A DNA stretch of 64,000 nucleotides from Isurus oxyrinchus (lineage: Eukaryota). The notes beneath the pieces are model-generated. The model made no database searches, was not told the origin of the DNA, and worked only from the letters and a program-made list of their open reading frames with translations. The translations under genes were made by a program, and so were the position numbers. Below, one piece after another: positions 4,223-63,170 of this stretch; position 1 is the first letter of the stretch, and each line of letters opens with the position of its first letter. The stretch covers positions 1,364,001 through 1,428,000 of the forward strand of contig JANJGN010000056.1 of the NCBI GenBank assembly GCA_026770705.1, in the 5' to 3' direction.

Positions 4223-5100
4223 TTAAGTGAAAGGATATTTCAACATTTTCCACAACTGCTTTCTGAACTTAGTCTGTGTCACAGCATAAATCCAAGTGTT
4301 TGTGCAGCAACTAAGGAGCTGCAGCATGAAGCCCAATTCCATAACAAAAAAATCTAGATACAGGGAATTATAGCCTAAATCAGACATCCGCAACCATATG
4401 GAAAACAACATTAGCATTCCCCATAAAATGATGAAATTGGCTGAAATATAAAAGAGTAACATGATTGATTTCTTTCGATTCTCCACCGCTGGGTCGTTGG
4501 GGCTTTGCCCACTCCTGTGAGGCCGGAGTCTCTTGCGGGCCCTGCTGGTCACTAAAATATACTCGATGGTCAAAATATTGATCAGCAGGATCAGCACAAA
4601 TGGGACACACGGTGTTAGAATGTGATGGGTGAACTCGATTGTTACCCAGGTAGGATTGAACAGAACCTCCTTTCTGTAACCACAAAACGAGGGGAAGTTT
4701 ACCATCCAGTACTGACCTGTAAGCAAAAAATACCAGAAAATGTTCTTTGAACAGCTCAGTGCAATGACGGTTCCCAGAATCACACCTGCCGTTTCCTCAC
4801 TGCAATATTTAGTTTTCAGCTTCGGGCAACAAATGGCCACAAATCGATCCAAGGTAAAAGTGACAGTGAACCACACAGAACAGTCAGTGGCTGCATAAAG
4901 CAGGACGGCATGGATATTACACACTGGGATTGATCGCAGGAAAGAAAAATACTTATCAAACACAATTGGAATATGCCTCAGTATCAGGTCCAGGATAATG
5001 ACCAGTAGATCAGCTACTGCCATGGCCACCAGGTAACGGGTAACACAATTGGAGAGGCCACACCTCCGGCGCCTGAGTATCACAATCGTGACAAGGTTCA
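4223..5100 (-). CDS. GPR139/GPR142-like orphan class A GPCR, copy 1, exon 2 (end of TM1 to stop)
   Basis: Open 292-codon frame with hydrophobic helices and the motifs NLVTIVIL, YLVAMAVADL, SVWFTVTFTLDRFVAIC and CCTNTWIYAVTQTKFR. Acceptor tttccttgcag|TG at 5101/5100. Confidence 0.9.
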
Positions 5101-6159
5101 CTGCAAGGAAAGGTAATAAATAATAAAAGGCTATATCACTCTGGTACCAAAGTTGCCAGTAAAATTGAGATGCGATGGAGATGTGTTACAGCAGCCTCCA
5201 GTGTAATGAAATGAATGGTCCAGAAACAAGGTATAAAAAATGTCTGTGATATAGTGGAAGGCAGGATACATTGAATGGTTAAAATAAGGAGGTGGGAATA
5301 AGGTGGAGATGGGAGTTTGCGGGAGAGCGGGAATATTTGCGAGACAAAGGAGGAAAGGAGTAATCGGGGGATAATCGGTGCACGTAGCGGTGATAACAGC
5401 GCATGGAGTGGTGGGCAAGCGTGCCCATTACGGGTGGTACTCATAGGTGATGTTGGAACTCATGAGTGGGAGGGGAGACGTGTTTGAGTGAGAGCAGCCA
5501 GAGGTGATGATTGCGTTCAGGCAAATAAGTGAAATGGGGTATTTTAATATTTTGCTCAACATATCTCCTGACAGGAAGGCTCTGCAGTTATGTGATGGAA
5601 TGTTTCCTCTCTCCAAGGATGTTATTTTAGGAATTTCGAAGAGAGCTTTCTTGCGAATTATCATTTCAAATTAAAGGATAAATGACCATTTCTTACAAAA
5701 TACGAAATGCAATTAATAATGATCATGTACACCACAAACACTCATACACCCTCACACAAAAATAATAATTTGCAGAAATGCTGCACATACTTAAGTTATT
5801 ACGAGTGTAGAACAGGAACAGCTCATTCCTTAATGTGCTTAATGTGCTGGTTGTAAACATTGCAGGACTGAGGTCTTCATTCCTCGGTTATTGAAGACAA
5901 ATGGAGTTTTTAAATATCTGGCTTTTAGTCGACAATGTGATGGAGCCTCTGTGTTGAAGATATGTACCAACATGTACAGCCTATCAGCCTCTTTTAATGC
6001 CTGAAATCTTCAAAAATGTCTCTTAAAAATATTATTTTGAAGTGTTTCTAATATGAGCAAAAGTCTCCCTGTCCTTCGATCTTGGTGTTGGATTTCGATT
6101 CTCCAAACACTAAATTTTACGTTGTGAACAACTTCAGAAAATGAAGTTATGTTCAAACT

Positions 6160-6650
6160 GGTTTCTTAGTGGCACAGCGAGACAACCTGTCAAAGGCGAA
6201 AGTATCCAGAATATATCTTACCACAATCTCCTCTTCTCCTGCAGTGTACTCCGGATTCCTGGTGACAATGCCTGTGTCCTTAAGATGGTGATGATATGAA
6301 GGATGCAGCAGAACACTATGAACATCAGCACCCGCTCCAGCGTGTAAGGGAGGGTTCACTCCCAATGGCTCAGGAATGAGAAGCGTTTCTTTCCCACAAT
6401 GGCGGGCTGATCCACAATGGCCTGTGCGACTCCATTACTCTTGGTATTGAGGTGTTATGTTCACCTGCTTTGTTGGAGGTAGGGAATGGCAAAGTTGCAT
6501 TCTTTTGATCCATGTACCGACGGGGCAGCCTTCATCTATGAAAAGCCACTGTGTGCTTCCCTATGGAGCTACGGAGATGCTGGAAACGTCCGACTGCTTC
6601 ATAATGAAGGTACTGTGGTTCTCGCCAGGATATTGGATGTTCACCAACGT
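6160..6650 (-). mobile_element. Highly decayed LINE (Tx1/L1-like ORF2) fragment in the GPCR intron
   Basis: Weak resemblance of the minus-strand translation to the Tx1-type region C-terminal of RT; paralog at ~36720-37220. Confidence 0.3.
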
Positions 6651-7378
6651 GATGTACTGTGCATAAATATACATCAAATGGACGTGAATTCAGTCAGAAT
6701 TCTTTCAGAGCCTTTAACTCTGTCCATTCTAATGGGGACACGGCAGAATTACGTACACCATTGGAATCCCTCTGCCCTGGGAGGCCATGGGACCGATCAT
6801 TCTGCTTCTCCCTATTAAGGGAGCAAAAGTACAAACGTGGCACCCAACAGAGATGTTCTCTGTCAGCTAATGAATACATAGTTAGACAACATACTGGGAG
6901 ATAATTAATATAACATCAGCTATTCTCCTGCGTGCACTATTCCGAATCCATTACACTTTCAATGATCATGTGAACACCGTGTCCAAAGACAGCAGCTCCC
7001 TCACCCTGGTGTGCGGCCCCAGGTCCTGTTGAAGGAGGTGACACGGGTCTGTAGCACCTTATTGTTGTGTCAGAGTTATATCCGTCTCTGAACATGTTTT
7101 GGGTGTAGGTTTGTAAGTGTTCCTGACAATCCAGGGGTACTTAGAGCAGTGCAACACCTCTCCCCCCAAAAAAAATGTTAACAGACGGTCCCCTCCCTAT
7201 TCACTCCGCTCATTTCGCTCGTCATGGTACAGGTCCAGGTGCACTGTAACTACATCCCCAAAACCTCTTCCAAGGTTGGGCCTATAGATACTCTATCCTC
7301 TCTCAATTCATGCAGCCCTTCACAGCACAGCACCAAGGAGACCATCTAAAGCACTTCAATGGACTTTGAAATAACAGT

Positions 7379-7516
7379 GATAAAAAAAAACAACTGCAGA
7401 TGCTGGAAATCCAAAAATTTCTGTCGAAGGGTCATGAGGACTCGAAATGTCAACTCTTTTCTTCTCCGCCGATGCTGCCAGACCTGCTGAGTTTTTCCAG
7501 GTAATTTTGTTTTTGT
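7379..7516 (+). mobile_element. 138-bp Penelope-like 3' fragment with an inverted terminal piece and a 14-bp TSD (tttgaaataacagt at 7365-7378 and 7517-7530)
   Basis: Matches the 30109-30208 tail of the large PLE; aactgcagatgctggaaatccaaaa is the reverse complement of the PLE 3' end; the paralogous site at ~37923-37935 is empty. Confidence 0.9.
7417..7455 (+). ncRNA. Minimal hammerhead-like motif (CUGUCGA-a-gggtc/gactc-GAAA-uGUC)
   Basis: Hammerhead core spacing with a 5-bp stem II, inside a PLE terminus; U at core position 6 instead of A. Confidence 0.55.
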
Positions 7517-8311
7517 TTTGAAATAACAGTAGTCAGTCAAAGTCCGTTCAGCTGACAGTCAGATGTCTGGCCCGTTTCAATTAAACTGGAAAGGGTGCCT
7601 CGTGTTTTTTAACAAATATTTAGCTGAGAGTGATTAACACAAGCTTTCGGTGGACGGGTACAGCCAGTGTTTCAAAGACATGCATCAAACATATTGAAAA
7701 CCCCCGCACAACACGGGACACCATGTGTGAGTTTCTGGACATGGGATTGATAGGAGAAGCGAGATTAAATTGTGATCAAATCACACGATTGGGAATTTTG
7801 AAATTGACGGACTGAAAGACCTGGCAGCAATCTTGGCCCTTGAGCACAGGGATAATTGTGGAATGAGATTTGGCAAGGGCAAGTTTACAAAGATTAGAGT
7901 TTTGTATGGGGTATGTTTTAAGAACGTTTGTAGCAGCAATTGTATGGCCAGATTAACATTTTAATAGCCGAGTCTGGCTTGGACAAATGCACAGCTGAGG
8001 GATCATTCGGGTGATGTGTTGATGCAGCGAGGATAGTGGGTGAGACTAAATAGCTGGTAGAAGACAGGCTTAAGGATAGAAAAGGTGAGGGCTCACAAAT
8101 CAGCTCAGGGCAAAATGGAGCATGGGAGTCGAAGACACTATGGTTCAGGCTTAGATAGTAGTGCGGTAGGCGGGTGGAGCGACTGGATATGGAACGATCA
8201 TTAAAACGGGAACAGTAGCAAATGACTTCCATCTTCCTGAAATGTAAGAGACAGTAACAGTAATACAGTCAATCTGGTTTAAGGAACAGATTGTTGCATA
8301 TAGGTTCTTAC

Positions 8312-8486
8312 CGCTGACACCAACAAGAGCCAGGATGGGGAAGTAACCAACTTGGATTAACGAAATTACTCCCTCGATCCTAACAGCTAATGATATCCGA
8401 TCTTGAGAAAGGTAGTAAAGCCCCGAGGATAAACTCCTGTCCATTTTTGTAAAATTCCAAGATTTTGTTCTAAGATTCTGATTCAT
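8312..8486 (-). CDS. GPR139-like GPCR copy 1, exon 1 (MNQNLRTKSWNFTK...YFPILALVGVS, 58 codons + 1 nt)
   Basis: ATG at 8486; donor G|gtaaga at 8312/8311; the phase-1 join G+TG gives Val in frame with exon 2 (350 aa in total). N-glycosylation sequon NFT. The start is conserved in copy 2. Confidence 0.85.
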
Positions 8487-8620
8487 TGTTGTCACGTTCC
8501 AATCTATTATTCTCAGGCTCTGATGTTTTCTCTCCCCCTCTCAGGAGTCGTTGATCCTTGCGACTGCTGAATGCGACTGTCCCCCTGACATTAGGGGACA
8601 GCACTTTGAAATGAGCCCCG

Positions 8621-8628
8621 TATAAATA
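8621..8628 (-). promoter_or_regulatory. Possible TATA element (TATTTATA on the minus strand) ~135 bp upstream of the GPCR ATG
   Basis: Position, plus conservation in copy 2 (39025-39032); no transcript evidence. Confidence 0.3.
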
Positions 8629-8959
8629 GCACTGTGAAACCCTCCAGTGACACAATTAGGATCCAGGGAGATTGAAGTTAATTACAGGGACTGAACAAAT
8701 CGGTTCAGTTAACGCCTTGCATTCCAACAATTTTTGTCTCACAACATAGTAGAAGATTTACTTGGCGTGGATCGGATGTATGTGGGTCGCTAAGGGATGG
8801 AAGGCTGCGAATAGAGGTTTCACTGACCATGACATGTAAATGCACCTGGGAATGATATCCGAGGACAGGAGGGTTTTAATTGTTCCACGCTATTTATAAA
8901 AGCAGAGTTCCAAAGCAGAATGGAATCTGGATTGATGACCTATTTTGAAAAATCATTTA

Positions 8960-9750
8960 TTTTGGAAGCGTGGGTTCCTTACTGAAGGAGGTTCACAGGA
9001 GCCTGATTTGACTTTGCAAGATTCACAAAAAAGATGTAATTAATCATGATCATATTACACCAGGCAACCAAACGCTTGGTAAGTTTTCATTACAGAGACC
9101 ACGAAATAAGTGGCAGAAACTCACGCTGCTCCTTTCATCCTACTAATGCCCTTATTAACCCAGGACCCCAGCGGCCAGGCACCATTATTTTTGGACCAAG
9201 GATAACGTTTGTTCAGTGGTAAAGAAGTAGATCTTCCAGTGGTCTCCTGAACATTCACTAGAAGCAATTGCACAATTGGTATATCCCTTTAGATATCCAG
9301 AACACTCAATCTAAATTCACCTCTCCTTTAGTGTTAGAGGATTATCCACGAGTTCCTTAAGAATCTGGCATCATGCCAAGTTGCAGACAAACTGAGGCCT
9401 TTTCGTCAAGTCTTGACTCATTGGCAATCTGATACAACTGAAACTACAAGGTCATAGGCTCCTAGTCTTTATGTATCTGTGCAGCTCCGCCTGATCACAA
9501 GTTGCGAGTCAACAACACAGTTTTATTTCCTACTTCTTGTCTTAGATGTGACTTCACTAAATCACCAAAACCTTTAGTAGCCAATCTCTTCATTTCAAGA
9601 TTCGTAATGCAGCCATTAAAATGTATACATTTAAACAGTGCCCCAGGCTGGCCGGCTAAATGTCACAAAAATCCAAACTGAAACCAAGCCCAGGCTTCAC
9701 ATTACAAATACAATTGTAGCTTGCCTAAAATAATATCGAGTTCCCATCAT
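8960..9750 (-). mobile_element. Putative decayed 3' LTR of the adjacent Gypsy element
   Basis: Lies 3' of the RNase H end, after a degenerate purine tract (ttttgcgggg on the minus strand, ~9754-9763); no partner LTR is visible. Confidence 0.3.
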
Positions 9751-9930
9751 TTACCCCGCAAAAGGATAAGAATTGAAAAGGTAGCTTTCAGAGGCATTTT
9801 CATTTCCCGTTAGCATCTCCTCTCGTCACTAAATCTATCTCATCTTACAGCTTTTACAATAGCTGTAATTATGTTCTTACAACAAATAAGCAAGTATTTC
9901 CATAAGAATCATATTCTATACAAGTCCATT

Positions 9931-12560
9931 TTAATTATGGTGTTCGTCTTCCTCCATATTTGCACTTGATGAAATATCTGTTGTTACACTGTAACTCCCA
10001 GCGAAATGGCTGAGTTTTTCATTGGAAGGGTGTGGCCTTAAACTCAACCAAAATAGTATTGGTTTCTTATTCTGAAACTTTTCTAGGAAGGATATTGGAT
10101 TTTGATTCTTATAAAATAATAATTTCTGCAGAATGTTTGGATGAGGAGACATATTGTACAGCCAGCACTATATTTAGGTAATCCTTCTCACTTCTGAATA
10201 TTTCCCCTGGTAAAAAAAAAGTACATTTCCAGTAACTTAACAGACTGGCCGTTCAATTCCCGTCTCGTCGCCCTGTGGTAAAAATGCTCCAACACTCACT
10301 AGCATCAAAAAGTAGTTTAAATGGCTTCACACAATGTGATGCTGCTAAAGCCAGTGGAGTGGTGAGTACAGCATTCAAGATGCCAAAGGCACTTAGGCCA
10401 TCCTTTGTCCATTCAAATATTTTTGCTTTTCTTTACCGAGGTGAAATTGAGGACAAACGTCCTATAAAATGCATTTATGCCAAGCGACCATAACATCGCT
10501 CCATTATTCTTAAGCACTGTCAATCCTGGATTACCCATATTTTCGCTTTTCTGGAGATCAGTATGCGTTTTCACCAAAATTTGGCCCAAATCAATCACTT
10601 TCGTTTTGGAAAATTCACTTTATGCAAATTTGATGACTAAATTGTATGTTTGTAAATGACCATACACATCATTCAATTGTATAAATTCCCCCCAAGCTCA
10701 GCGGAACACAACAAACTTCTCACTATATGTATAACACTGTTAAATAATCCTTCAAAGACGCGTTCGCTTAATCATTGAGATGTTACTGTTGCATTCTTCA
10801 TTCCGAAAGACATGAAATTACGTTTAAAATACCCATTCGTGTTTGCAAAATCTGTTGTTTCTTTGGCCACTTCTGTTAAAGGGACTTTTCAGTACCCCTA
10901 CAATAAATCATTTCTTTTAGCAGGAAACTTGCTTGCCCAATCTTTTCAGTACAGTTTTCCAATCCTGGAATAAGATATGGATCCGCGTATGTGATTGCAT
11001 TAACGTTGCCACAAACTACACACAATCATTCTGACCCATATAGTTTATGTGGTTTTATAAGAGGTAAGCTCCATGTACTGTGAATCGGTTGAATAATGTC
11101 ATCGTCGAACATAAACTTTATTGCTTCTTTCGCTTAGATTAACATCCCTGGAAGAAGCCTGATAGATGTTGCTTTTTTGGTGACATCCCCAACATTGCAA
11201 CATTTTAGGCCAAAGCCATTTTCCTTGGTCGATCTGTACAATGAGTTTCATGAGTTTTTAATAACTTTCATAAGACATCTCGGAACTATTTTCTGGAAGT
11301 TAGCGTAATATGGCAGGGGCATCACGGGTTATCTGGCTTAAATTGCTAAATGGAAATCGAAACACTGGAAGATCAAATATTGTCTTATTGAATAGTGGAG
11401 CAGCTTCAAGGGACCGATTGCTCTACCGCTGTTATTATTTCTTATGCTCTTATCTAAATTTTAACGGCCTCTGAACTGTACAATGTAACCACTGGAGAGT
11501 TGAGTTTAGAATTTCCGATTTCTGGTTCATTCTCCAAATGGTTTGAGATATTAATTCCTCCCCTTTCTCCTTTCACTAATGCAAACACATTCCTCTCCTG
11601 GTTACCTTCCCAGCCATTATTTGGCTTTAACATATTGACGGGAAACATTCAGTTGAATTTCACCCTGATTGGAGTGCTCACTAGATCATTCACAGAATTG
11701 AGTTTCTTTGTGACTTGGTAAAGGCCGATGAACCTTGCTTTTCTCTTTTTACTAGCGAAAAGTCACCAAACTCAAACATTTCCTCCAGCAACATAACTTC
11801 GAGTTTTGGAATAGATATCTGCACCTGCTTCTATTGTTTGTCGTGCATTTCTATTTTTACATGTTTTTTGACCGACCCACAGGGCTTGGTTAGTTTTTCC
11901 CAGCAGTTTGTCACGTTGGTCAAATGTGACGCCTCGGAACTTTGGTTGATAAATTTCCCTTTAATTAATTTCACTGGATCTCGCGCCACTTCCTCAACTA
12001 TCAGGTCAAAAGCACTGAATGCTGTGGACTCCTTCTGGGCGTCCCTTAGAAATACCAATCGAAGGACTCTATCACAAAAATGGACCATCATTGACAATAT
12101 ACTTTAATCGTCATCTTTAAAGTTGGATTTCATTTTGCTAAAGTTCCTTATAACTGTGAATAAAACGCTGAAGGCTGAAAATAGTTTTTCCCTCTCCCAA
12201 ACTTTTCATTTTTTATTTGAATATCTGTGACATAAAATATGAGCCTTGATCTGATTAATTTTCCTGAGGAAATCCACATATTTTAAAGAAATGAACTCGC
12301 TTTCCCCCTACAATTTTCACCATTATCTTCCTGAAATGCACTGCCACTGGAAATCTTGTTAGAGCTACCATAATTTTTGAAACACACTGTTTCCCACTTC
12401 TGATTTAGCTGGGGGTCCAAAACAATCTATTAAGGAAGTGCTAAATGGTTCTGTACAAGCTGGTATTGGACTGAATAAAGGATGCACTTGAATTGATGAT
12501 TCTGGCTTCCCCACTATTAGCATGTATGTCATGTCTGGCAGAAACTAACAACGCCTTTAT
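9931..12560 (-). mobile_element. Decayed Ty3/Gypsy pol with integrase upstream of RT-RNase H (Gmr1-like order), copy A
   Basis: Minus-strand remnants. Integrase: GKPESSIQVHPLFSPIPACTEPFS (~12440-12530) and LRDAQKESTAFSAFDLIVEEVARDPVKLIK (11831-12097). RT: VNAITYADPYLIPGLENCTEKIGQA and MSFGMKNA (~10790-11010). RNase H: NPISFLEKFQNKKPILFW (9931-10152). Confidence 0.75.
11380..11452 (+). mobile_element. Short CR1-type 3' tail inserted in the Gypsy element
   Basis: ggagcagcttcaagggaccgattg...atttcttatgctcttat resembles the CR1 3' hairpin plus terminal octamer repeats. Confidence 0.55.
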
Positions 12561-13114
12561 GAAACCGTGGGAAAAAAATATGTTTCAGCATGTTAGCCTG
12601 TGTTTGGAACACCGTAAGCAACTCGTGATGGAACGTCCACCAGATGAACTATTGTAAAGTGCCGATTGGCTCATATTTGAGGTGGTCTCCCTTTCCTCAT
12701 TAGCAGAGCATTGTTAAATAATAACACTCAGGTACTGATTCTGATTCAGGCTCTGATAGGGTGTTATAGCATATTCTCTCAACTGAGGATCAGCCTGTTG
12801 CATTTCTACTAAAGTAGATGGACCAAAATGTCATGCCTATTCTAATTACATTCTTCAGTTTGCTCCAGTTCCTTCTAAGGCTTCCTTTTTTTGCGGGGCT
12901 GAGATCTAGTCATGAAGCAGTCAAGAAACAACCCAGGATATTGCTCAAATCGCGCCTCAGCTACTTTCAGTTCCAGTTGGTGTTATAACAGTCTCGGTGA
13001 GGCTAATATATTTGAGCCAGCTGTCTCATAGCCCAAGATGTAATCAATTCCTTAGATAGCGATTTGATCCAAAGCTCCAACTGCAGCCTCTACTCTCACT
13101 AAGTGACTTATTTT

Positions 13115-15712
13115 GGGTGGAGTCTTCTGAGACCACTGACGGCGGGTGTGATATGTGGTGGGCATGGAAAATATGGTGGGGTCCACTTCAAGATGGCATG
13201 AATGCAGTTCGCGATCTTCTCCTTAGCCTACCGCTAACGGGCTGCATTTCTCACCATCGGTCAACGAGAAGCTGTAGCGAGTGTGATTTTATTTGATTCA
13301 GGTTGCCTACCCGCGCCTTTAAGGATCCAAGAGGCTCGAAAGTGCCATCAGCCGTTCCATGTATTACCCCCCCCCCCCCCAACTGACCCCCACACAAACC
13401 GGCACTGGTTTCAAATCCGCCAGCAATTCATTGCACTGCACAACAGTTGGACTTCACACGTTGTGTAATCTCTTCGCCAACACTGGTCATGTAGCAGTCA
13501 CTGCTGGAGGCGCTGTCAGCTCCTTGCATATTCAGCATCATTGTTTGTATCAGTGTCCCCAATGCCGAATGTTGACAAGGCACCCAGGCAGAGCAATCCT
13601 CCCTGGCATTCTGAGGGGTGACCAGCACTTTCTGGGAAGCATTATGGGTTTTTACTAAAGGACCAGCGATGATTACCACGTGTCGCTCTCTTTCATGCTG
13701 TAGGAGGACCATGTCAGGAACATGAATCCTGGTTACTTAGCAGCACGCCTGATGGCCGACAGGGACCGTTTAAGATGGAGGAGAGAGCGACTGGTCAGGC
13801 AGCTTCAGGAGCAAAATCCCGGAATTAAAGACTGCATGCTGACTGTGACGCTCTGGCTGTGAAAACTTTGGCTTCGGTCCTCTCAGAGGCCGAGATTTGC
13901 AGGACACCTGTCTGTTTTCATCGCCCTGCTGTGGGACAGTGGCATCCTGCTCGACCTGTGCAGCTGGACCTGTATAGTCTACAGGAAGAGGGAAGGCACA
14001 TGGGCCTGTCATTCGCTGAGTCACTTGGTTGGATGGCCCCGGAGCGTGCACATGCTGACCTTCCTCCCTATGTGTGCCCGAGAAACCCTTGCTGACTCAG
14101 TGAGTGGGAGGGGCAGCTGGATTGAGATCATGCATCCGAGGACCCATCTTATGTACGGTCTGCTGGATGCTAACTATGGCAGCAGCAAAATAGTTATGCC
14201 CATGCAGCATTGCATGAGTAGATGCTCTGGACCAAGGTCTCCATGGCAAACGCCATAATGCCAGTGTTGGACACTGCATGTTGCAATGCCGGTGCTCCTA
14301 CATGAGCCTGGAGATGGATGGTCTCCTCCATCATGCATTACAATTTGAGGAGTGCAGCCGACATTACTTTCTGATGTTGGCTGGCTTACCGTTGCAGCTC
14401 CAATTCTGTGATATGACCAAGTCCAGTTGCTCAACATCTGACTCGTATTCAACAACTTTCTGGCTTCAGAACTCCGTGTGTGGAGACCAGGGAAATCCGT
14501 GCCTCCACCTGCTATGGAGGGGGCAAGTTGTCATCAGATTATGATCCCGAGGCTTCTCTAAACCTACGTCCCATGGAGTCGTGTGTCTCTACACTGGCAG
14601 AGGGCGTGGATGAGCGCTCTAATGCAACTTTAGGCAGGGTGCCTTCAGACTCCTCCTCAGACTTTTCAACGGAGCTGTATGGGGGCACTGGGACCTGGAA
14701 TCCGTCGGCCGTTTCGCAGGTGTGCCTGAGAAAACAAGGGGAAATAATCAGTGCATGATATTGGCATATGATAGAGGACACATCACACACAGAAGTGTTT
14801 GCTAATGAATGCTGCACTCCTGGATCCTCACTTGGTAGATCATTGCTGACCTCATCGTTAACACAAGAGTGGTCCCAGTTATAACTGCCCAGTTGAATGC
14901 CTCTGTTGTCCAATTCCATCAGAATGTTGATGTCCAGCAATACGTTCCTGTCTGCGATCTAGCCTTCCTGTTGTGATCCAATTTGTCCATCATGGATAGA
15001 GATAAGAGGGTGTATCATGATTCCTGCCAGGCCAGATGACAAGTATGCCTGGTATGTGTGGGTGGTGAGTGGCCCAATGTGCGGGATGAAGACAATGGCG
15101 GCCTGTGTGAAAGAGTCAATGTCGCCATCCCTTGCACTGGCAGTGAGTGAGGGCCTTGCGTTTGAGTGATGGGTTTGTGAGTGTGTGTTATGCGTGAAGG
15201 AAAGAATGACTTACACTGGAGGGACAGAGAAGATCATTCATACTTATGTGACTCTTGGTGGTTGATTTTATCTGCAGGTCGTTCGCCCTGACCAATGCTG
15301 TGAGCGCTGCCCAGTCTGGGTTTGTGACATTGATGCCCATCCTCCAGATGGTAGGGCACATCCCGGCTGCCCTCCAGCAGTATCTCGAGGGATCCATCAT
15401 TTAAGAGGGTGGCTGCAGGCATTTTACCTTTATTGGCCTTATCTCCCAGACAGAGGTGGTGAGCTGGTGGTGATCAGCGATTTGCTGAGGGCTACATTGT
15501 AAAGGCAACGGCCAGGGTGATGCAAAAGCGCTTTAATGTTGAGTGATCAAATCGAAGTTCTGCCACCTTGGAAACAATGTGTTTATTATGCATAAATAAT
15601 AAAGTGGTCTTGGGAAGTTATGGCATGAAAACCCGCCATTTTTGTCGATGGCCAGGGCTCCATTTCACCAGCATGCTAGCGCAATTAGAGCAATTATGGG
15701 TGAATTCCAGCC
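13115..15712. mobile_element. Decayed PIF/Harbinger-like DNA transposon (transposase N-terminus on +, Myb/SANT-like gene on -)
   Basis: Minus 15220-15422 gives LNDGSLEILLE / PDWAALTALVRANDLQIKSTTKSHISMNDLL followed by gtaagt (trihelix/Myb-like). Plus 13440-13690 gives NLFANTG...HHCLYQ...GF..DYHVSL, resembling the HARBI1 N-terminus. TIRs are weak. Confidence 0.5.
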
Positions 15713-16361: not shown

Positions 16362-16396
<35 letters not shown>

Positions 16397-17531: not shown

Positions 17532-18406
17532 TTAATATGTTGAAATAATTGGGGTGAAGAGATGTTGCAGCATATTCTTAACTGCTCCGTGAACTTAGAC
17601 TGCTCTCTCTGTAAATCCCAGTGTTTGTGCAACAACCCAGGACCTGCAGCATTAAGCCTAATTCCTGAACAAAAGCATAGAGATACATAGACTTATAGCA
17701 CAAATTCCACATCAGCCTCCAAATAGAAGAAACAATTGACATTGAACATAACAGGAAGAAATTGGCTGAGATATCAGACAGAACATTCATAGATTTCCTT
17801 CTACTCACCATTTATGGATCGCCGGGATTATCCCACTTCTGTGAGCCTGGAATCCCCTGTGTTCTCTGCTTTTCATTAAAATCTGCTTTACCATGAAAAC
17901 ATTGAGCAGCAGAATCAGGGTAAATGGAAAGCACGATGTTAGAATATGTTGGAAGAACTCAACTGCTATCCAGAACAGAGATTCGTGAATATCCCATGTG
18001 AAATCCCTGAAACCAGGGGGCGTTCATCAGCCGATATGCAACTGTTATCATAATATACGAGAAAATGTTATTTGAACAGCTCAGCACAATCAATGTTCCC
18101 AGAAGCACAGTGGCTATTTTCTCACTGCAATATTCAGTTTTCAGCTTCAGGGAACAAATGGCCACAAATCCCCCAAAGGTGAAAGTGACGGTGAAACAAA
18201 CAGGACAGTCTGTGGCTGCATAAAGCAAGATGGTGTGGATATTACACACGTGGATGGAGTTCCAGAAGTAAAACTGTTCCTTAAACAAGAATGGAATGTG
18301 CCTTATTATCACATCAGGGATAACGACCTTTCGTCAGCCACAGCCATGGCCACCAGGTACTGACCACATCTGTTGCTCCCGAGGATCACAATCATGACAA
18401 AGTTCG
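17532..18406 (-). pseudogene. GPR139-like GPCR pseudogene (exon 2 only)
   Basis: Acceptor ccaggcag|CG then NFVMIVILG; fragments IRHIPF...CNIHTILLYAATDCPVCFTVTFTFGGFVAIC and RRKSM...QELGLMLQVLGCCTNTGIY in different frames with deletions; DRF has become GGF. Confidence 0.9.
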
Positions 18407-20019: not shown

Positions 20020-20830
20020 CACACAAACAGACACACATGCCCGCCTCCAGGNNNNNNNNNNNNNNNNNNNNNNNNNNNNNNNNNNNNNNNNNNNNNNNNN
20101 NNNNNNNNNNNNNNNNNNNNNNNNNNNNNNNNNNNNNNNNNNNNNNNNNNNNNNNNNNNNNNNNNNNNNNNNNNNNNNNNNNNNNNNNNNNNNNNNNNNN
20201 NNNNNNNNNNNNNNNNNNNNNNNNNNNNNNNNNNNNNNNNNNNNNNNNNNNNNNNNNNNNNNNNNNNNNNNNNNNNNNNNNNNNNNNNNNNNNNNNNNNN
20301 NNNNNNNNNNNNNNNNNNCAGAAAAACACGCACACAGACGCACACACACGCACATGTATGTGTACACACTTAGAAGTACAGGCACAAACAAACAAACACT
20401 TACATATGAAAATGACACAGAGACACAGCAACAAAGCACATGCACACACATAAAAAATGCACACGCACACACAAATTCACCCCTATGCACAAACAGAGCG
20501 ACAAACACACATACGCAGAGAATAAAAGCACAGAGGCTCATGTACTCATCATCTTACTCACTCTTCCTGTCTCTCTCTCTATATCGCATAGACACATATA
20601 TTCCCATGCTCCACCACACCTCACATACACTCACGTACAGCCACACTCACATCCACACATACACACACGCACATACACACGCACATACACACACACACAA
20701 ACACATACACAGACACTCACACACACAATCACATACACTGGCATACACTGGCATAGAAGCAAGCACATAGAAAAATACAGACAGGCGCAATCACACACAT
20801 ACGTCATGAAAAACCAAGACACACACATTT
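19765..20830. repeat. (CA)n and CA-rich microsatellite containing an assembly gap
   Basis: Pure (CA)n at ~19955-20016 with a degenerate CA-rich flank. Confidence 0.95.
20052..20318. other. Assembly gap (267 N)
   Basis: Run of n. Confidence 1.
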
Positions 20831-29691: not shown

Positions 29692-30104
29692 ACTCCCTCC
29701 CCCATCACCACCCCCTTTCTGTTTCCCCCTTTTTCCTTTTTTTTCCCTATAAATTTTATAGATTTTTCTTTTCCCACCTATTTCCATTATTTTTAAATAT
29801 TTTAAAATCTTTTATGCTCCCCCACCCCCACTAGAGCTGTACCTTGAGTGCCCTACCATCCATTCTTAATTAGCACATTCGTTTAGATAATATCACCAAC
29901 TTTAACTTTAACACCTATGTGTTCTTTTGTACCATTGTCGCTGACATCTTTTGATGATCTGCTTCTATCACTGCTTGTTTGTCTACACAACCAGCTCTCT
30001 CTCTCTCTATCTCTCCGCACCACCCCCCCCCCCCCCCCCCCCACCCCCACACACACACACCTTAAACCAGCTTATATTTCAACTCTTTCTTGGACTCGAA
30101 ATCA

Positions 30105-38600: not shown

Positions 38601-38715
38601 ATCATTCAAACGGGAACAGTAGCAAATGACTTCCATCTTCCTGAAATGGAAAAGACAGTAACAGTAATGCAGTCAATCTGGTTTAAAGAACAGATTGTTG
38701 CATGTACTTTCTTAC

Positions 38716-38890
38716 CGCTGACACCAACAAGAGCCAGGATGGGAAAGTAACCAACTTGGATTACCGAAATTACACCCTTGATCCTTTCAGCTAATGACAT
38801 CCGATCTTGAGAAAGGTAGTAAAGCCCCGAGGATAAACTCCTGTCAATTTTTGTAAAATTCCAAGATTTTGTTCTAAGATTCTGATTCAT
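38716..38890 (-). pseudogene. GPR139-like GPCR copy 2, exon 1 (open, 175 nt)
   Basis: MNQNLRTKSWNFTKIDRS...YFPILALVGVS with donor G|gtaaga at 38716/38715. Confidence 0.85.
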
Positions 38891-42930: not shown

Positions 42931-45900
42931 AAACTAACAACATCTTTATAAAACCATGGGAAATAAGATATGTTTCAGCATATTAGCATGTGTTTTCTTA
43001 AAGCACGCATGAACTGCCATTGGAACACCGTAAGCAACTCGTGATGGAACATCCAGTGGATGAACTATTGTAAATTGCTGATTGGCTCATATTTGAGGTG
43101 GCCTCCCTTTCCTCATAAGCACAGCATTTTTAAATAATAACACTCAGGTACTGATTCTGATTCAGGCTCTGATAGGGTGTTATATCAAATGCTCTCAACT
43201 TAGGATCAGCCTGTTGCATTTCTACTAAAGTAGATGGACCGAAATGTCATCCCCATTCTCTTTACATTCTTCAGTTTGCTGCAGTTCCTTCTATGGGTTC
43301 GTATTATTTGGCCAGAGATCAAGCCATGAAGCAGTCAAGACATAATGCAGGGTATTAGTCAAATCGCGCCTGAGCTACTTTCAGTTCCAGTGGGTGTTAT
43401 AACAATCTCAGTGAGGCTACTTTGAACCAGACGTCTCAGAGCCCAAGATAAAATCAATTCCTTAGATAGTGATTTGATACAAAGCTCCAACTGCAGCCTC
43501 TCCTCTCACGAAGTGACTTATTTTGGGTGCAGTCTTCCGAGCCCACTGACGGCGGGTGTGATATGTGGCGGGCATGGTAAATATGGTGGGTCCCACTTCA
43601 AGACACCGTGAATGCAGGTCGCGATCTTCTGCTCAGCCTACCGCTAACGGGCTGCGTTTCTTACCATCGGTCAACGGGAAGCTATTTGCAATGATTAACA
43701 CATAATTTAAAGGGCATCCCTTCAGGTGTATGGAATCCATGTCATCAGTATAGCATAACGACCTATGATGATTTTCTTTAGCTGACAAGTTTACACTGCC
43801 GACATGAACGGATACCACTATTACCCGTTGGGTATGACTACCACTCCAAGCTCATCTGACTACTTCATGTCGAACTATCTTAACAATCCAACAAATCAGG
43901 CTGAAACGTTTGCCCAAAATGAATATCCGCTGAATAGAATATCCTAAAATGGCAACCATTCCTCACAATTAAACAACTAACCTAAGCCCAGCCGATCGAA
44001 GCTCCTCCAGCCCGAACGAACCTGACATTACTGAACACTGCAATTGAACTGACTACACTCAAAAGCTGACCCATTCTCCCAAACCGACATGACTGCCATT
44101 CAGCACTAACTAAATTCTTGTGGCTCCAACCTGAAGAAAGAAACAATCTACTCATCAAAACAATGAAGCAACTATCCGCGACCTGAATAGACTATCCCCC
44201 AATTAAACGCAATTACTTCGATCATCGAGCAGAGCTTTCCCGCAGCTTGGCCTGTCTACATCTCGAGTTGCTGAACAAACACCCGGGCAAAACAAAGTGC
44301 CTCCCACTTCCCCCGACCTGCGTGCCAGCCACGCCAGCAGATCTAATTATCCCACGGCTGAACAGACTTTTCAACACACAAGTCCCAGCTACAAAATGAC
44401 TCTACCCGACTCCATCCAATTTCCCCGACTTCTCTGGATGATAGACTCTGCACAATACATACACCCTCCAGCTGATGAAATCTGCATCGATGTGACTCTC
44501 CCCCAAGTCCAAATAAAATTGTCCCCCGATCACTCACGAGCTATTATCAAACAGGCTTGAATATGGACATGACCAAAGTGACTAGAGCCCCAACGAGAAA
44601 AATAACTCAGATCGAGGCACCACCACAATCCGCCTACATAACCTCCCTCTTCCCAGTTACCACCTGACCCCATTCACCTCACGAAACACCCGAAGCATCC
44701 CGACCTTCCACAGTTTATCCAAATCGCAGTACCGGACCAAATTCACCACTGTCCCCAATAACCTCTTAAAACAACCCGACCTTTTTGCAGGCCAGTTAAC
44801 TACTGCCAGACAAACCTAATAAGATTTCACTCATCCTCGCTGCATTTCCAAACACACACAACCAATTAACCTGACCTGATTAGCCGTTTGAAAGGCCGCA
44901 GTTAAGTCCCGATTTAACAAACTATCCTCTGAGGCTAGACTACTTGCTGACTTGAACGGAGCTGACTACACCTGGCCAACCAACTAACCCATCGAATAAA
45001 TGTAAAACCCAATTGCTTGAATTTCCAACAAAAAGGACTGCTCCTCTGTCCTGACCACACTGATAGATACATCACTAATCTTGACTCGGCCCAACCTTCC
45101 AAAAGCGCAAATTTCTGTAGCTGCGCACCCCAATGATTCCTACACTTATTCTGGCAAGAATTTATTCCTTGACCTCTCTGGCCCCGAATCTTATGAAAGG
45201 AATACACACAGAACATCCAGTGAAAGAAGCACACGCACCCTGAGATAACTTCCCTCATTAATGAGGCTAACCCTCGAAAAGCATTGACACTGCCCTGTGA
45301 CCATACATGAATACCACCATCCCCGGCTTTGCTGGATTACCCACGAACCGATTTACATGCCCTTTCAAACTGACCGACTGCCCCGTCGATCTGAATGGAA
45401 AACCTCCACGAATTGAGCCGAAAGCCCGGACGCAAGCCAATTGCACATCGGCTTCGACATCCCTTACTACCTGATCCGAATATGCAGCAAACAGACATGT
45501 GTATGGAGGACACCACCCACACCTACTCCCCTCAATCCACTTCCCCATATGAATGGCATGGAAAACATGAACAATCTTGGAAACCTGCACCAACCTTTAC
45601 TGAGGAGTTCAATCCTTGCACTTCAGGCATCGCAAGCAATGTTTCATCATGTAAGTAGCCCATTCCGTGCTGCTCCTGGTGCTACATTGCTCCCCTTGAA
45701 CAAGGATGATTAAAAACATAGACAATAGGAGCAGCTATATACCTTTTGGCCCTTCGAGCCTGTCGCATCATCTATATGTTCACATTTCCTCCTCCAAAAT
45801 AATGCCAATGTTCAGCTCTCTCCTCATAAGGTTTGAAGTCTTTAGAGTCTAGAAATCTCCTTTATAGTCTGGAAAACTGTCCACTGTATTGTTAAATATA

Positions 45901-54569: not shown

Positions 54570-54639
54570 ATGGCAAAACTAAGACTTCGCCAGATTGAAG
54601 ACATTTACTATTATATTCTCGTGTCTATTGGCGTACCTG
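54570..54639 (+). pseudogene. Divergent GPR139-like gene, exon 1 (MAKLRLRQIEDIYYYILVSIGVP + G)
   Basis: ATG at 54570, 23 codons + 1 nt, donor G|gtcaga; IYYYILVSIGVP matches the family TM1 pattern. Confidence 0.75.
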
Positions 54640-61700: not shown

Positions 61701-62944
61701 TTTCTACTTCACCCGGTCAAAGAAGGGACCTCACTTCTGTGCCCTGAGTTGGAAAACTTCGAGTTAAATCGCAGTCAAATAATATTTCTGAATTGCTCAT
61801 TCACCAAATTTTGGTTATCGATCTAATTCCCATTTCCCCTGCATTTTACCATATCTACTAAATGTGCTTTAAAACTGGCCTGCCTGGAAAGAAACGTGGC
61901 CATGCACAAAACTGACTCTGCCCTGAAACTGCCAATAAATATTCCCAGACCAATATAATCAGTCTGCCTGACAATATCACTTTTTTTCCCATTTGGACAT
62001 TAAACTGCCCCTTGATCAGCACTGACTAAACCAGACTTCCCACCCTGCATAGTAAATGTTGCTTCAGTCCTTCTGCAATGATTCAGCGAAAGATACATTC
62101 TGAACTTTTCCTCGACAATGCTCAGCCTGCCTATCAATGTTAAATTACTTAACATGCCTTAAAACAACTGACTGGTCTGTCATGAGCCCCTACTTCACAC
62201 CGCCAGTCTCCATAAACACTCTTCCTTCCTTGCATCGTAGTTGAACGCCAGCATGAGGGCACCTGAGTAAACATTCATTCAGCCTCATCTATGTGGGACT
62301 TTTTTGTAGTCCAGTGACCATTATAACATTTCCTGTTTATTGCAATTCCACCTATACCATCCCAAGTGCCCAGATTTGCCCAGGGCTACGTTTTTTCTTC
62401 AAGCTGTCTCTCCTGTTGCACAATGAAACTTCCCACCACTTACTAAATCTATTAAATGCCCGGCACAATTTCCATCACTACATCTTCCAGAGCATAACTC
62501 TACTATGCTACATCTTTATTTTGTGCCCGTATTTCACAGTCCACATTGCACCTTCACACGTGAATTCGCTCTTTCCACCTCCTTTTTCTGATTTAAAATG
62601 TAACGTGCCAAGGCTTTTTTGGACCTTCAGTCAGTCCAGTACACATTCTCCCTCAATGCGTTCAATCTTCATTGCACAATAGCTGTCCAGAATTCATTGA
62701 GGGTGCTGCTCCCTAAGGATGAATAATCAATTAATGCTTCACCATCCTGGGCACTTTTACTAGGTTCAATGCATATATAAAACACGTTGCTATTGGAAAT
62801 CATGCTAAACATGCTTGCATCAAACACTTTAAAAGATGCACGAAGAAACTAAATTTGCACTGAATACCGTTTGCTGCAAACAAAAGAAAAATATGTTCAT
62901 CTGTGTTGTTTATCTCATGTGATGTCTCTCTCTCTCTCTTACAG

Positions 62945-63170
62945 TAAATGGCGTTACAATTGTGATTCTTTTGCGAGGAAAGCATGGTCTCTGCAAATGC
63001 ATTACATACTTTATGCTGGCAATGGCAGCGGCTGATCTCCTTGTTGATTGTGCTGTTATCATACTGACCGTTTAATTCTGGTCATTGAGGCCTGTGTGCC
63101 AGCTAGCTGCGACAATGCTTTGTGAGTCACATCAGACTCTTTCTGGTTAACATTGATATCTACCTTAATC
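62945..63170 (+). pseudogene. Divergent GPR139-like gene, truncated exon 2
   Basis: Acceptor (tc)n-ttacag|TA then NGVTIVILLRGKHGLCKCITYFMLAMAAADLLV, stop at ~63075, and a degenerate SDSFWLTLIST (compare DCSVWFTVTFT) before similarity ends. Confidence 0.85.

What the first reader, a model, noticed from the sequence alone, without database searches (positions are those of the whole stretch)
4223..63170. Birth-and-death cluster of GPR139-like orphan GPCRs: candidate chondrichthyan chemosensory-type receptor family
Seen: four homologous loci in 64 kb (one intact, one with a single frameshift, two decayed), on both strands, all with a phase-1 intron acceptor inside TM1. Established: GPR139/GPR142 are single-copy aromatic amino-acid-sensing receptors in mammals, and sharks have few classical OR genes. 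Inference: tandem expansion with rapid pseudogenisation is how odorant, vomeronasal and taste families behave, so this may be a poorly characterised amino-acid or peptide chemoreceptor (or immune-sensor) repertoire. Such genes are commonly auto-annotated as GPR139-like, so the novelty lies in the function, not in their existence.
Basis: partly seen in the sequence, partly recalled or inferred. Interest (0 to 1): 0.85.

Follow-up and report, generated by a model that had tools for sequence, protein, structure and literature searches.

The report
Shark orphan receptor gene cluster
This stretch of shark-like DNA holds one healthy gene, one nearly healthy copy and several wrecks of a very large, little-studied receptor family of cartilaginous fishes, whose job (perhaps sensing chemicals) is still untested.

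Summary
Observation confirmed. The window holds four loci, plus two small relics, of one class-A GPCR family.
- A1 (4223-8486, minus strand) is intact: 350 codons in two coding exons.
- A2 (34778-38890) is a copy of A1 with one 1-bp deletion.
- B (17608-18406) and C (62945-63120, plus strand) are decayed.

All four keep an AG acceptor at the same phase-1 place in TM1.

A1 and A2 are not independent births. They lie in one segmental duplication of at least 13.3 kb.

The N gap (20052-20318) sits in CA-repeat DNA, 1.6 kb from the nearest receptor piece. It crosses no frame of the family.

The family is not GPR139 proper: A1 scores 29 bits against human GPR139. It is a chondrichthyan clade with 1,487 database relatives. 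Sharks, rays and a chimaera were seen among those checked. Its nearest outside relatives are two low-copy vertebrate orphan groups.

Paralogs differ in the N-terminus and extracellular loops, while the helix core is nearly fixed.

No expression evidence could be obtained, so the chemosensory reading stays untested (my odds about 0.35).

No paper I could search describes the expansion.

The scan has noted this family before on other DNA of this genome (142 notes; follow-ups s1-864206 and s1-870781).

The parts
8621..8684 (-). Promoter-like composite upstream of A1: TAATTA, 20 nt, TAATTG, 26 nt, TATTTATA. It lies 135 nt upstream of the ATG.
   Evidence: Sequence read. A pattern search found 2 matches in the window (here and upstream of A2), with 0 expected from 100 shuffles. 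Function not tested.
8312..8486 (-). A1 coding exon 1: 58 codons plus 1 base. It encodes the N-terminal ectodomain with an N-x-T site and the first part of TM1. Donor is G|GTAAGA, phase 1.
   Evidence: Exon-1 HMM hit, E 2.9e-26. ATG and donor read.
5101..8311 (-). A1 intron, 3,211 nt, GT...AG.
4223..5100 (-). A1 coding exon 2: 2 bases, 291 codons and the stop. It runs from the end of TM1 to helix 8. Intact.
   Evidence: ORF. Pfam 7tm_1, E 6.8e-15. Family HMM, E 8e-161. 47 of 48 near-invariant family residues kept.
39025..39088 (-). The same promoter-like composite upstream of A2.
38716..38890 (-). A2 coding exon 1, open, with the donor kept.
   Evidence: Exon-1 HMM, E 1.8e-25..
34778..35657 (-). 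A2 exon 2. It is 97.3% identical in DNA to A1 exon 2. It has a 1-bp deletion at 35339/35340, which gives a premature stop at 35316-35314, and an in-frame 3-bp insertion at about 34964-34966.
   Evidence: 46 of 48 near-invariant residues kept. Reads were inconclusive on the deletion.
17608..18406 (-). B: an old pseudogene of exon 2, with the acceptor CAG|CG at the homologous phase-1 place. No exon 1 was found.
   Evidence: Four HMM pieces in changing frames. Stops, DRF changed to GGF, and a short ICL1 deletion relative to the family (LSKCVTR-type segment absent). 32 of 48 near-invariant residues kept. Groups with orectolobiform shark sequences (98/93).
62945..63120 (+). C: a truncated relic of exon 2 (TM1 end to TM2/ECL1), with the acceptor ACAG|TA at the homologous phase-1 place. 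It has an in-frame stop, and the remainder is missing before the window ends.
   Evidence: HMM, E 3.4e-10. Sequence read.
54573..54639 (+). Candidate exon-1 relic of C. It ends ...IGVP plus G|GTCAGA, a phase-1 donor at the homologous codon. This would give an intron of about 8.3 kb.
   Evidence: Weak HMM hit only, E 0.44. Strand, order and donor phase fit. Treat as a candidate.
106..279 (-). D: a TM7/helix-8 relic with an in-frame stop, downstream of A1.
   Evidence: (E 9.8e-6).
30668..30841 (-). D': the copy of D inside the right-hand duplicate.
   Evidence: (E 2e-4).
5..13273 (.). Left copy of the segmental duplication. It carries D and A1. Its left end is cut by the window edge.
   Evidence: Self-blastn. 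Identity profile.
30567..43683 (.). Right copy of the segmental duplication. It carries D' and A2. Identity to the left copy is 85-99% in 250-bp bins.
20052..20318 (.). Assembly gap (N) inside CA-repeat DNA. It does not touch any receptor piece.

Best explanation
**Shown**
- The window is part of a tandem array of a chondrichthyan-specific, strongly expanded clade of class-A (rhodopsin-type) orphan GPCR genes. Databases label them 'probable GPR139' by nearest-neighbour naming.
- The array evolves by birth and death. Segmental duplication makes new copies, here a unit of at least 13.3 kb that copied A1 and the relic D together. Frameshifts, stops and truncation then remove them (A2 recently, B long ago, C and D to fragments).
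- Each gene has a short TATA-containing upstream block and two coding exons. Exon 1 encodes a glycosylatable N-terminus and most of TM1. A phase-1 intron follows, and exon 2 encodes the rest.

**Inferred**
- A1 encodes a working seven-helix receptor that signals through a G protein. The family's D-R-F, W6.48 and N-x-x-x-Y switches and the TM3-ECL2 cysteine pair are kept.
- The deep helix core, nearly fixed among paralogs, binds a common chemical anchor. By analogy with GPR139 and its protostome peptide-receptor kin, this is probably an aromatic amino-acid side chain.
- The variable N-terminus, ECL1, ECL2 hairpin and ECL3 rim give each paralog its own ligand, either peptides or amino-acid derivatives.

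**Most likely role**
- A diversified sensor repertoire for chemical cues. I put external chemosensation (nose, mouth or skin) at about 0.35, internal peptide or immune sensing at about 0.3, and the rest unknown.
For: **Family and fold**
- Pfam 7tm_1 is above its cutoff.
- A1 exon 2 is 49-72% identical to the 120 listed of 1,487 relatives. Of those 120, 117 come from 10 shark species and 3 are unnamed.
- The representative search gave 109 clusters at E<=1e-30.
- Of the 30 representatives I looked up, the ones that fall inside the family clade and carry a name are all sharks, rays or skates (Mobula, Narcine, Hypanus, Leucoraja, Rhinoraja) or the chimaera Callorhinchus.
- The AF2 model of the nearest full-length homologue, P0003, has pLDDT 90.5, seven helices, helix 8 and an ECL2 hairpin.

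**Tree (64 rows)**
- A1, A2 and B lie in a shark-only core clade (100/100).
- The whole chondrichthyan family is one clade (82/81).
- It is separate from two conserved low-copy vertebrate groups, each 100/100.

**Birth and death**
- Duplication.
- A2 deletion and premature stop.
- Decay of B, C and D.

**A1 looks functional**
- 47 of 48 near-invariant residues are kept.
- Both splice sites are canonical.

**Variation pattern**
- Entropy across 64 paralogs is high only in the N-terminus, ECL1, ECL2, part of ICL3 and the TM6 top, ECL3 and TM7 top.

**Ligand analogy**
- This rests on passages of PMC8557429. They say GPR139 responds to aromatic amino acids and peptides, and that related protostome receptors bind peptides with C-terminal aromatic residues.

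**Background**
Against: - There is no expression evidence of any kind. No RNA run holds the gene. The two small 'RNA?' runs I laid gave one 32-40-nt partial match each.
[quoted passage not shown] That is weak evidence, since single chemoreceptors are lowly expressed.
- The fixed helix core is unlike odorant receptors, whose pocket residues vary (recalled, not tested).
- Monophyly of the chondrichthyan family has only moderate support (82/81). True GPR139 and GPR142 are not in the tree.
- A1/A2 dN/dS of about 0.6-0.7 rests on about 9 synonymous and 17-21 non-synonymous changes. It shows neither positive selection nor strong constraint.
- The ligand model is analogy only.
Confidence: 0.8

Rival explanations
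1. Olfactory receptor repertoire in the strict sense. The family is expressed one gene per neuron in the olfactory epithelium and makes up for the near absence of OR genes in cartilaginous fishes.
For: - Large family, tandem clusters and many pseudogenes.
- Variation lies on the extracellular face.
- A shared homeodomain-site/TATA block sits upstream of A1 and A2. Note s1-870781 reports the same layout on another piece of this genome.
- Sharks have few OR genes, and these are little expressed in the nose (PMC11979771 passages; PMC10116579, title and start of abstract only).
Against: - No expression data.
- The O/E-like stretches in the block are poor matches to the consensus as I recall it (reading).
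- No GPCR is among the top 50 olfactory/brain-specific catshark genes.
- Neither shark-olfaction paper I checked mentions the family.
- The block could only be compared between two recent duplicates here.
Confidence: 0.2
2. Internal signalling receptors. This would be a diversified set of neuropeptide, hormone or immune-peptide receptors expressed in brain, gut, gonad or leukocytes, co-evolving with endogenous or pathogen-derived peptides.
For: - The closest solved structures are peptide receptors (CCK1R, NTSR1, TRHR, opioid, orexin) and GPR139.
- The ECL2 beta-hairpin is typical of peptide receptors ('typical' is recalled).
- GPR139 kin in protostomes are neuropeptide receptors (PMC8557429 passages).
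- The variable loops with a fixed core fit peptide recognition.
Against: - Hundreds of paralogs with a high pseudogene fraction are unusual for endocrine receptors (general knowledge).
- No matching expanded peptide family is known to me.
- No expression data.
Confidence: 0.3
3. Largely functionless amplification. The copies spread passively with segmental duplications in repeat-rich DNA, and most or all are on the way to decay.
For: - In this window, 1 of 4 loci (1 of 6 counting relics) is intact.
- The duplicate unit is flanked by a Penelope-like element.
- A1/A2 dN/dS is about 0.6-0.7.
Against: - The helix core is nearly invariant across 64 paralogs from 10 shark species.
- 48 positions are at least 90% conserved across 104 sequences, including rays, a coelacanth and amphibians.
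- A1 keeps 47 of those 48 positions.
- Subclades are shared by sharks, rays and a chimaera. This means long-term purifying selection.
Confidence: 0.07
4. A true GPR139 (or GPR142) orthologue with a few local copies.
For: - Human GPR139 is the only solved structure hit at E<=1e-5 for A1.
- It has the highest identity among the Foldseek matches (22%).
- Database names say 'probable GPR139'.
Against: - Only 29.4 bits, E 4.8e-6.
- A1 scores far higher against other groups: 102 bits to coelacanth P0242, and 68-84 bits to unnamed and mollusc proteins.
- 1,487 relatives, not a few.
Confidence: 0.01

Closest known systems
Human GPR139 (PDB 7VUG, 9M42)
   Same: - Class-A fold.
- It is the best, and at E<=1e-5 the only, solved-structure sequence match, and rank 2 by Foldseek with the highest identity.
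- In the alignment, the TM3 S-x-W-x-T-V and D-R-[Y/F] stretch, the TM6 tryptophan and a proline-less N-x-x-x-Y in TM7 line up.
   Different: - About 22-25% identity, 29 bits.
- The residues after the TM6 tryptophan differ: A-P-R in GPR139 against G-M-L in A1.
- GPR139 is a single conserved brain receptor in mammals (recalled). This family has over a thousand database members with pseudogenes.
Conserved low-copy vertebrate 'GPR139-like' groups. L: coelacanth XP_005988539, catshark, sturgeon, teleosts, amphibians, turtles, squamates. M: amphibians plus sturgeon.
   Same: - They are the nearest relatives outside cartilaginous fishes: 31-33% identity, 96-102 bits.
- They sit in the same 100/100 ingroup in the tree.
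- Human GPR139 is also their best solved match.
   Different: - Each is a tight clade (100/100) of one or a few genes per species at 46-74% identity.
- Sharks have their own L orthologue (P0287, 66% to coelacanth), so the expanded family is not that gene.
- The branching order of L, M and the expanded family is unresolved (80/64).
- L may be the 'GPR210' subtypes named in PMC6504862 (passage). I did not check the identifiers.
Vertebrate multigene chemoreceptor and sensory GPCR families (OR, TAAR, V1R/ORA, T2R, MRGPR)
   Same: - The mode of evolution: tandem arrays, segmental duplication, many pseudogenes and lineage-specific clades.
- The seven-helix class-A architecture.
   Different: - No specific sequence kinship: only the general 7tm_1 model matched, and the nearest structures are peptide receptors.
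- The coding region is split by an intron in TM1.
- Variation sits in the loops, not in the helix pocket.
- Sensory expression has not been shown.
Protostome MIP/allatostatin-B, proctolin, myosuppressin and FMRFamide-type-1 receptors
   Same: [quoted passage not shown] That paper reads this as a lineage-specific expansion of one ancestral receptor.
   Different: - Not compared by sequence here, apart from one mollusc protein and four unnamed proteins used as outgroup.
- Their ligands are known. Ligands here are unknown.

Membership tests
Class-A (rhodopsin-type) GPCR, Pfam PF00001 | Match to 7tm_1 above Pfam's gathering score | tested here: met
   A1 exon 2 scores 55.7 bits against a cutoff of 30.5, E 6.8e-15, covering model positions 2-260 of 260.
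Class-A (rhodopsin-type) GPCR, Pfam PF00001 | Seven transmembrane helices plus helix 8 | tested here: met
   Shown on the natural homologue P0003 (72% identical to A1 exon 2). The AF2 model has pLDDT 90.5 and pTM 0.87, with helices at 36-71, 79-108, 122-152, 163-187, 211-254, 265-302, 312-336 and H8 at 338-349. A1's own spliced product was not folded, because the joined step was left out.
Class-A (rhodopsin-type) GPCR, Pfam PF00001 | Conserved switch residues: TM2 Asp, TM3-ECL2 cysteines, D-R-x, TM5 Pro, TM6 Trp, TM7 N-x-x-x-Y | tested here: met
   A1 keeps 47 of the 48 positions that are at least 90% conserved in the 104-sequence alignment, including D92, C122/C201, D146-R147-F148, P228, W288, N329 and Y333 in P0003 numbering. 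The usual TM6 and TM7 prolines are absent family-wide.
GPR139 orthologue | Close, reciprocal sequence similarity to human GPR139 | tested here: not met
   29.4 bits, E 4.8e-6, and 22% identity in the structural alignment. A1 scores higher against many other proteins.
GPR139 orthologue | Groups with bona fide GPR139 in a tree that also holds GPR142 | not testable with these tools
   No tool returned a true GPR139 or GPR142 sequence as a stored protein.
GPR139 orthologue | Activation by L-Trp/L-Phe and related aromatic ligands | not testable with these tools
   Needs a cell assay.
Chondrichthyan expanded 'probable GPR139' family | Nested within the clade of annotated shark, ray and chimaera members | tested here: met
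   A1, A2 and B lie inside a 14-row shark clade (100/100), within a 44-row chondrichthyan clade (82/81). Identity to the listed members is 49-72%.
Chondrichthyan expanded 'probable GPR139' family | Two coding exons with a phase-1 intron inside TM1 | tested here: met
   In the window, the acceptor is at the homologous place in 4 of 4 loci. Matching donors are present in 2 loci, plus 1 candidate.
Known vertebrate chemoreceptor families (OR, TAAR, ORA/V1R, OlfC/V2R, T1R, T2R) | Sequence membership in one of these families | tested here: not met
   Only the general 7tm_1 model matched at E<=0.01. All named relatives are 'GPR139'-type. The nearest structures are peptide receptors.
Chemosensory receptor in the functional sense | Expression in sensory cells of nose, mouth or skin | not testable with these tools
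   No RNA holder was found. The RNA-labelled runs that were laid were empty but for one 32-40-nt partial match each. The papers are silent.
Chemosensory receptor in the functional sense | Birth-and-death multigene evolution with lineage-specific clades | tested here: met

The most novel reading that the evidence does not exclude
This family is the missing main chemoreceptor repertoire of cartilaginous fishes. It would be a fifth class of vertebrate odorant or tastant receptors, derived from an ancient aromatic-amino-acid/peptide receptor. It would be expressed in single sensory cells of the nose or mouth, and tuned by its variable loops to peptides and amino-acid derivatives from prey and conspecifics.
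Probability: 0.2. Interest if true: 0.9.

Novelty: new member of a known kind. Interest (0 to 1): 0.5.

Why it matters
[quoted passage not shown] In catshark the nose is described as relying mostly on about 30 V2R genes (PMC11979771 passages; PMC10116579 title).

A class-A receptor family with over a thousand database members across sharks, rays and a chimaera is an obvious candidate to test against that puzzle. It evolves like a sensory repertoire and is absent from the papers I could search.

Whatever its tissue, it also gives a natural series of receptors with one fixed helix core and many loop variants. That is useful for learning how GPR139-type orphan receptors recognise ligands.

This particular window adds four things:
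- a clean gene model;
- a dated-looking example of birth by a 13-kb duplication;
- three stages of death;
- a shared upstream block.

It adds no evidence on function.

Tried and rejected
- **Expression.** The look-up of sequencing runs (kind any) on 4100-8600 listed no RNA holder. The single read-laying run (34700-39000; runs X1, X5, X22, X24) returned only short Logan unitigs.
  - The two RNA-labelled runs gave one 32-40-nt partial match each.
  - No X1 unitig spans 35339.
  - One X5 unitig carries the extra base, but with 4 other differences, so it may come from A1 or another paralog.
  - Both expression and the reality of the A2 frameshift stay open.
- **Exon 1 and promoter of B and C.** blastn and nhmmer with A1's 8700-8300 found only A1 and A2. 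The exon-1 HMM gave nothing for B and only a weak candidate for C.
- **O/E (Ebf) site in the upstream block.** The two candidate stretches are poor matches to the consensus as I recall it. I do not count them as evidence.
- **Positive selection.** The Nei-Gojobori count on A1/A2 has too few changes, and my handling of the 3-bp indel inflates the non-synonymous count by about 3. No claim is made from it.
- **True GPR139/GPR142 in the tree.** These sequences could not be obtained. Scores against the solved human GPR139 were used instead.
- **AU tests** of the order of the L, M and expanded groups were not run. I report that order as unresolved.
- **ESM Atlas** gave only 'probable GPR139' clusters and invertebrate look-alikes.
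- **Literature.**
  - Searches: 'GPR139'+'shark' (4 papers, none relevant); a six-term search; 'G-protein coupled receptor 139'+'expansion'+'olfactory'; 'GPR139-like' (0 papers).
  - Passages read: PMC11979771, PMC10116579 (the only term matches were in its reference list), PMC10638732, PMC6504862 and PMC8557429.
  - None describes the chondrichthyan expansion.
  - Supplements were closed. The catshark expression tables (datasets S7 and S8 of PMC11979771) could bear on tissue expression, and I could not see them.
- **Species.** Organism codes were left coded. I did not try to name the species.

Full report
**What is in the window**

A 292-codon ORF at 4223-5101 on the minus strand matches Pfam 7tm_1 (55.7 bits, cutoff 30.5). 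tBLASTn of its extended frame against the window, and a family HMM built from 86 homologues run against 2,797 six-frame pieces, find these loci:
- A1: 4226-5110(-), E 8e-161.
- A2: 34781-35682(-), in two frames, E 1e-87 and 6e-65.
- B: 17608-18407(-), four pieces in changing frames, E 2e-47 to 0.02.
- C: 62935-63063(+), E 3e-10.

These scores are far beyond chance. The next best hit in that search had E 0.9.

**The gap**

The single N run, 20052-20318, is flanked on both sides by CA-rich low-complexity DNA. Only low-complexity ORFs cross it. The nearest receptor piece is 1.6 kb away. No frame of the family crosses it, so continuity across it does not affect any copy. It does leave open the real spacing to the right of B, and whether B's lost exon 1 lies there. 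I neither filled it nor looked it up.

**Gene model**

An HMM of the N-terminal part of 78 of the 120 listed homologues finds exon 1 of A1 and A2 (E 3e-26 and 2e-25). The next hits are at E 0.33 and above.

A1 reads as follows:
- ATG at 8486.
- Exon 1 ends at 8312, with donor G|GTAAGA.
- Intron of 3,211 nt.
- Acceptor CAG|TG, with exon 2 starting at 5100.
- Stop at 4223-4225.

The intron is phase 1 and lies inside TM1.

B (CAG|CG) and C (ACAG|TA) keep an AG at exactly the homologous place and phase. So do A1 and A2, making 4 of 4.

A weak exon-1-like piece on the plus strand at 54573-54639 ends in ...IGVP followed by G|GTCAGA, a phase-1 donor at the homologous codon. It is a candidate exon-1 relic of C (E only 0.44).

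For the fold I used a natural full-length homologue.

**State of the copies**

- A1 keeps 47 of the 48 positions that are at least 90% conserved in a 104-sequence alignment.
- A2's exon 2 differs from A1's at 24 of 887 aligned bases. It has one 1-bp deletion at 35339/35340 and an in-frame 3-bp insertion. Read straight through, it stops at codon 114 of exon 2. It keeps 46 of 48 positions.
- B keeps 32 of 48. It has several stops and frame changes, has lost the D-R of the D-R-F motif, and lacks a short ICL1 segment that the family has.
- C breaks off after about 45 codons.
- D and D' are TM7/helix-8 fragments with an in-frame stop.

The one read-laying run could not confirm the A2 deletion. No unitig of run X1 spans the place. 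The single X5 unitig that does span it carries the extra base, but also 4 other differences, so it may come from A1 or another paralog.

**One duplication, not two births**

Self-comparison shows that 5-13273 is repeated at 30567-43683 (92.2% and 90.8% over the two blocks). A1/A2 and D/D' were therefore copied together in a unit of at least 13.3 kb whose left end is cut by the window edge.

Identity along the unit is uneven:
- 92-98% over 1-5250.
- 87-92% in the A1 intron.
- 99.2% over the first 250 bp of exon 2.

This fits a conversion tract or a two-step history. The same-window note s1-897183 suggested the same thing.

A Nei-Gojobori count gives dN/dS of about 0.6-0.7, from about 9 synonymous and 17-21 non-synonymous changes. 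That is too few for a claim. The amino-acid differences lie mostly in ECL2 and the top of TM5, in ICL3, and in the top of TM6 and ECL3.

**What family it is**

A1 exon 2 finds 1,487 proteins at E<=1e-5. The 120 listed are 49-72% identical. Of these, 117 come from 10 shark species: Heterodontus 50, Heptranchias 26, Rhincodon 12, Stegostoma 10, two Scyliorhinus species 5 each, Chiloscyllium 3, Pristiophorus 3, Carcharodon 2 and Mustelus 1. [quoted passage not shown]

Against 50%-identity representatives there are 900 clusters at E<=1e-3, 163 at 1e-10 and 109 at 1e-30.

Name look-ups of 30 representatives show:
- rays and skates (Mobula, Narcine, Hypanus, Leucoraja, Rhinoraja) and the chimaera Callorhinchus at 34-46% identity;
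- then a coelacanth, salamanders and a teleost at 31-32%.

Human GPR139 is the only solved structure matched at E<=1e-5, but with just 29.4 bits. So the name is a nearest-neighbour label, not orthology.

**Relatives outside cartilaginous fishes**

- The coelacanth protein belongs to a conserved low-copy group, which I call L. It includes catshark at 66%, sturgeon, teleosts, amphibians, turtles and squamates.
- The salamander protein belongs to a second group, M. It includes frogs, salamanders and a caecilian at 66-74% and a sturgeon at 46%. After those come members of the expanded family at 32-33%.
- Human GPR139 is the best solved match of both groups, at 70 and 53 bits.

I built a careful ML tree of 64 rows. 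The rows were 3 window rows plus 61 of the 434 stored proteins, picked by hand. The outgroup was one mollusc protein and four unnamed proteins. The tree gives:
- ingroup 100/100;
- L 100/100;
- M 100/100;
- the chondrichthyan family as one clade of 44 rows, 82/81;
- L+M 80/64, which I treat as unresolved;
- a shark-only core clade of 14 rows, 100/100, holding A1, A2 and B.

A1/A2 sit next to a Scyliorhinus canicula protein (91/82). B sits with orectolobiform sequences (98/93). B is therefore an older, different lineage from A. Ray, skate and chimaera sequences are nested in several subclades, so the family had diversified before those lineages split.

True GPR139 and GPR142 could not be added.

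PMC6504862 (passage) names extra coelacanth and fish subtypes 'GPR210A/B' beside GPR139/142. These may be L or M, but I did not check the identifiers. That paper does not mention cartilaginous fishes.

**Structure and where the paralogs differ**

The AF2 model of P0003 (72% identical to A1 exon 2), made with the 104-row alignment, has pLDDT 90.5 and pTM 0.87. It shows seven helices, helix 8, a short N-terminal helix and a beta-hairpin ECL2.

Foldseek against the PDB returns generic class-A peptide receptors. CCK1R is first and GPR139 second, the latter with the highest identity at 22%.

Column entropy over 64 core shark paralogs is near zero through TM2, TM3-ICL2-TM4, TM5, TM6 and TM7. It is high in the N-terminus, ECL1, ECL2, part of ICL3 and the TM6 top, ECL3 and TM7 top.

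**How it most likely works (inference)**

The receptor switches are kept, so intact members should signal through G proteins. A fixed deep core with variable entrance loops suggests a shared chemical anchor and paralog-specific recognition of the rest of the ligand.

Passages of PMC8557429 state three things:
- GPR139 responds to aromatic amino acids and to ACTH/MSH-type peptides.
- GPR139/142 are sister to protostome receptors for peptides with C-terminal aromatic residues.
- The ancestral receptor probably bound such peptides.

By analogy I propose an aromatic anchor with loop-determined specificity for peptides or amino-acid derivatives. This is untested.

**Upstream block**

A composite of TAATTA, 20 nt, TAATTG, 26 nt and TATTTATA lies 135 nt upstream of both ATGs. 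It occurs nowhere else in the window: 2 matches, 0 expected from 100 shuffles. The layout matches what note s1-870781 reports for paralogs on another piece of this genome.

Here it can only be compared between two recent duplicates. I found no good O/E site, and nothing shows that it is an olfactory promoter.

**Function**

No run on record as RNA holds the gene. The two small RNA-labelled runs I laid gave nothing usable.

In the DNA run X1, summed word depth is 2,911-10,581 in 4 of the 7 bins over A2's exon 2, and at most 690 in the other 26 bins. This fits many near-identical paralogous words in the genome, although the tool warns that it is not a copy number.

Passages of PMC11979771 say three things about catshark:
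- It has 2 canonical OR genes.
- V2Rs are the main olfactory family.

That paper and PMC10116579 do not mention this family.

A snail genome paper lists a 'probable GPR139' among genes high in the osphradium (PMC10638732 passage). That is only a loose precedent.

The chemosensory reading is therefore reasonable but untested. My odds are about 0.35 for any external chemosensory role (0.2 for a strict olfactory repertoire), 0.3 for internal peptide or immune sensing, and 0.07 for passive decay.

**Novelty and verdict**

The genes are annotated in public databases. No paper I could search describes the expansion. Supplements were closed.

The scan has already met this family many times on other DNA of the same genome: 142 notes fit 'gpr139', and follow-ups s1-864206 and s1-870781 reached similar conclusions.

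I file it as a new member of a known kind, namely a lineage-specific GPCR family that evolves by birth and death. Interest is moderate for this window, and high only if a sensory role is shown.

Noticed in passing
window 27107-30246 (+); also 25812-26495: A Penelope-like retroelement. The ORF at 27736-29691 has RVT_1 (E 2.5e-8) and a GIY-YIG match just under Pfam's cutoff (22.0 against 22.6 bits). An inverted partial copy lies at 25812-26495, matching 30246-29545 at 79%. The element ends just left of the start of the right-hand duplicate (30567).
   Followed up: partly
window 21093-22293 and 57637-58794: A 1.2-kb direct repeat, 89% identical. It is probably a dispersed repeat and was not characterised.
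   Followed up: no
window 4751-5100 and 35300-35657: The first 250-325 bases of exon 2 are almost identical between A1 and A2 (1 mismatch), while the intron next to it is only 87-92% identical. This looks like a gene-conversion tract or a second, later copying of the 3' part of the unit.
   Followed up: partly
window 8621-8684 and 39025-39088 (-): A promoter-like block with two homeodomain-type TAAT sites and a TATA box lies 135 nt upstream of the ATG of A1 and of A2. It occurs only there in the window.
   Followed up: partly
window 8312-8540 (-): Exon 1 holds tandem units of about 14 residues with N-x-T sites (...IDWNVTTM...-like). In A1 the first unit lies upstream of the first ATG. Some Heptranchias homologues show three or more such units.
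   Followed up: no
proteins P0242/P0287 (group L) and P0244/P0424 (group M), not in the window: Two conserved low-copy vertebrate orphan receptors related to GPR139 came out of the searches. L is found from sharks to squamates. Some of its gene models are fused to TMEM183A, which hints at a conserved neighbour. M is found in amphibians plus sturgeon only. No mammal or bird appeared among the listed hits.
   Followed up: partly
window 2565-3364 and 33166-33810 (+): Long Ser/Leu-rich low-complexity ORFs lie in CT-rich DNA, present in both copies of the duplication. They are probably not genes.
   Followed up: no
window 34844-35707: Summed word depth of DNA unitigs of organism A is 4 to 400 times higher over conserved parts of exon 2 than over the intron. 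This is a hint of many paralogs, though the tool says it is not a copy number.
   Followed up: no
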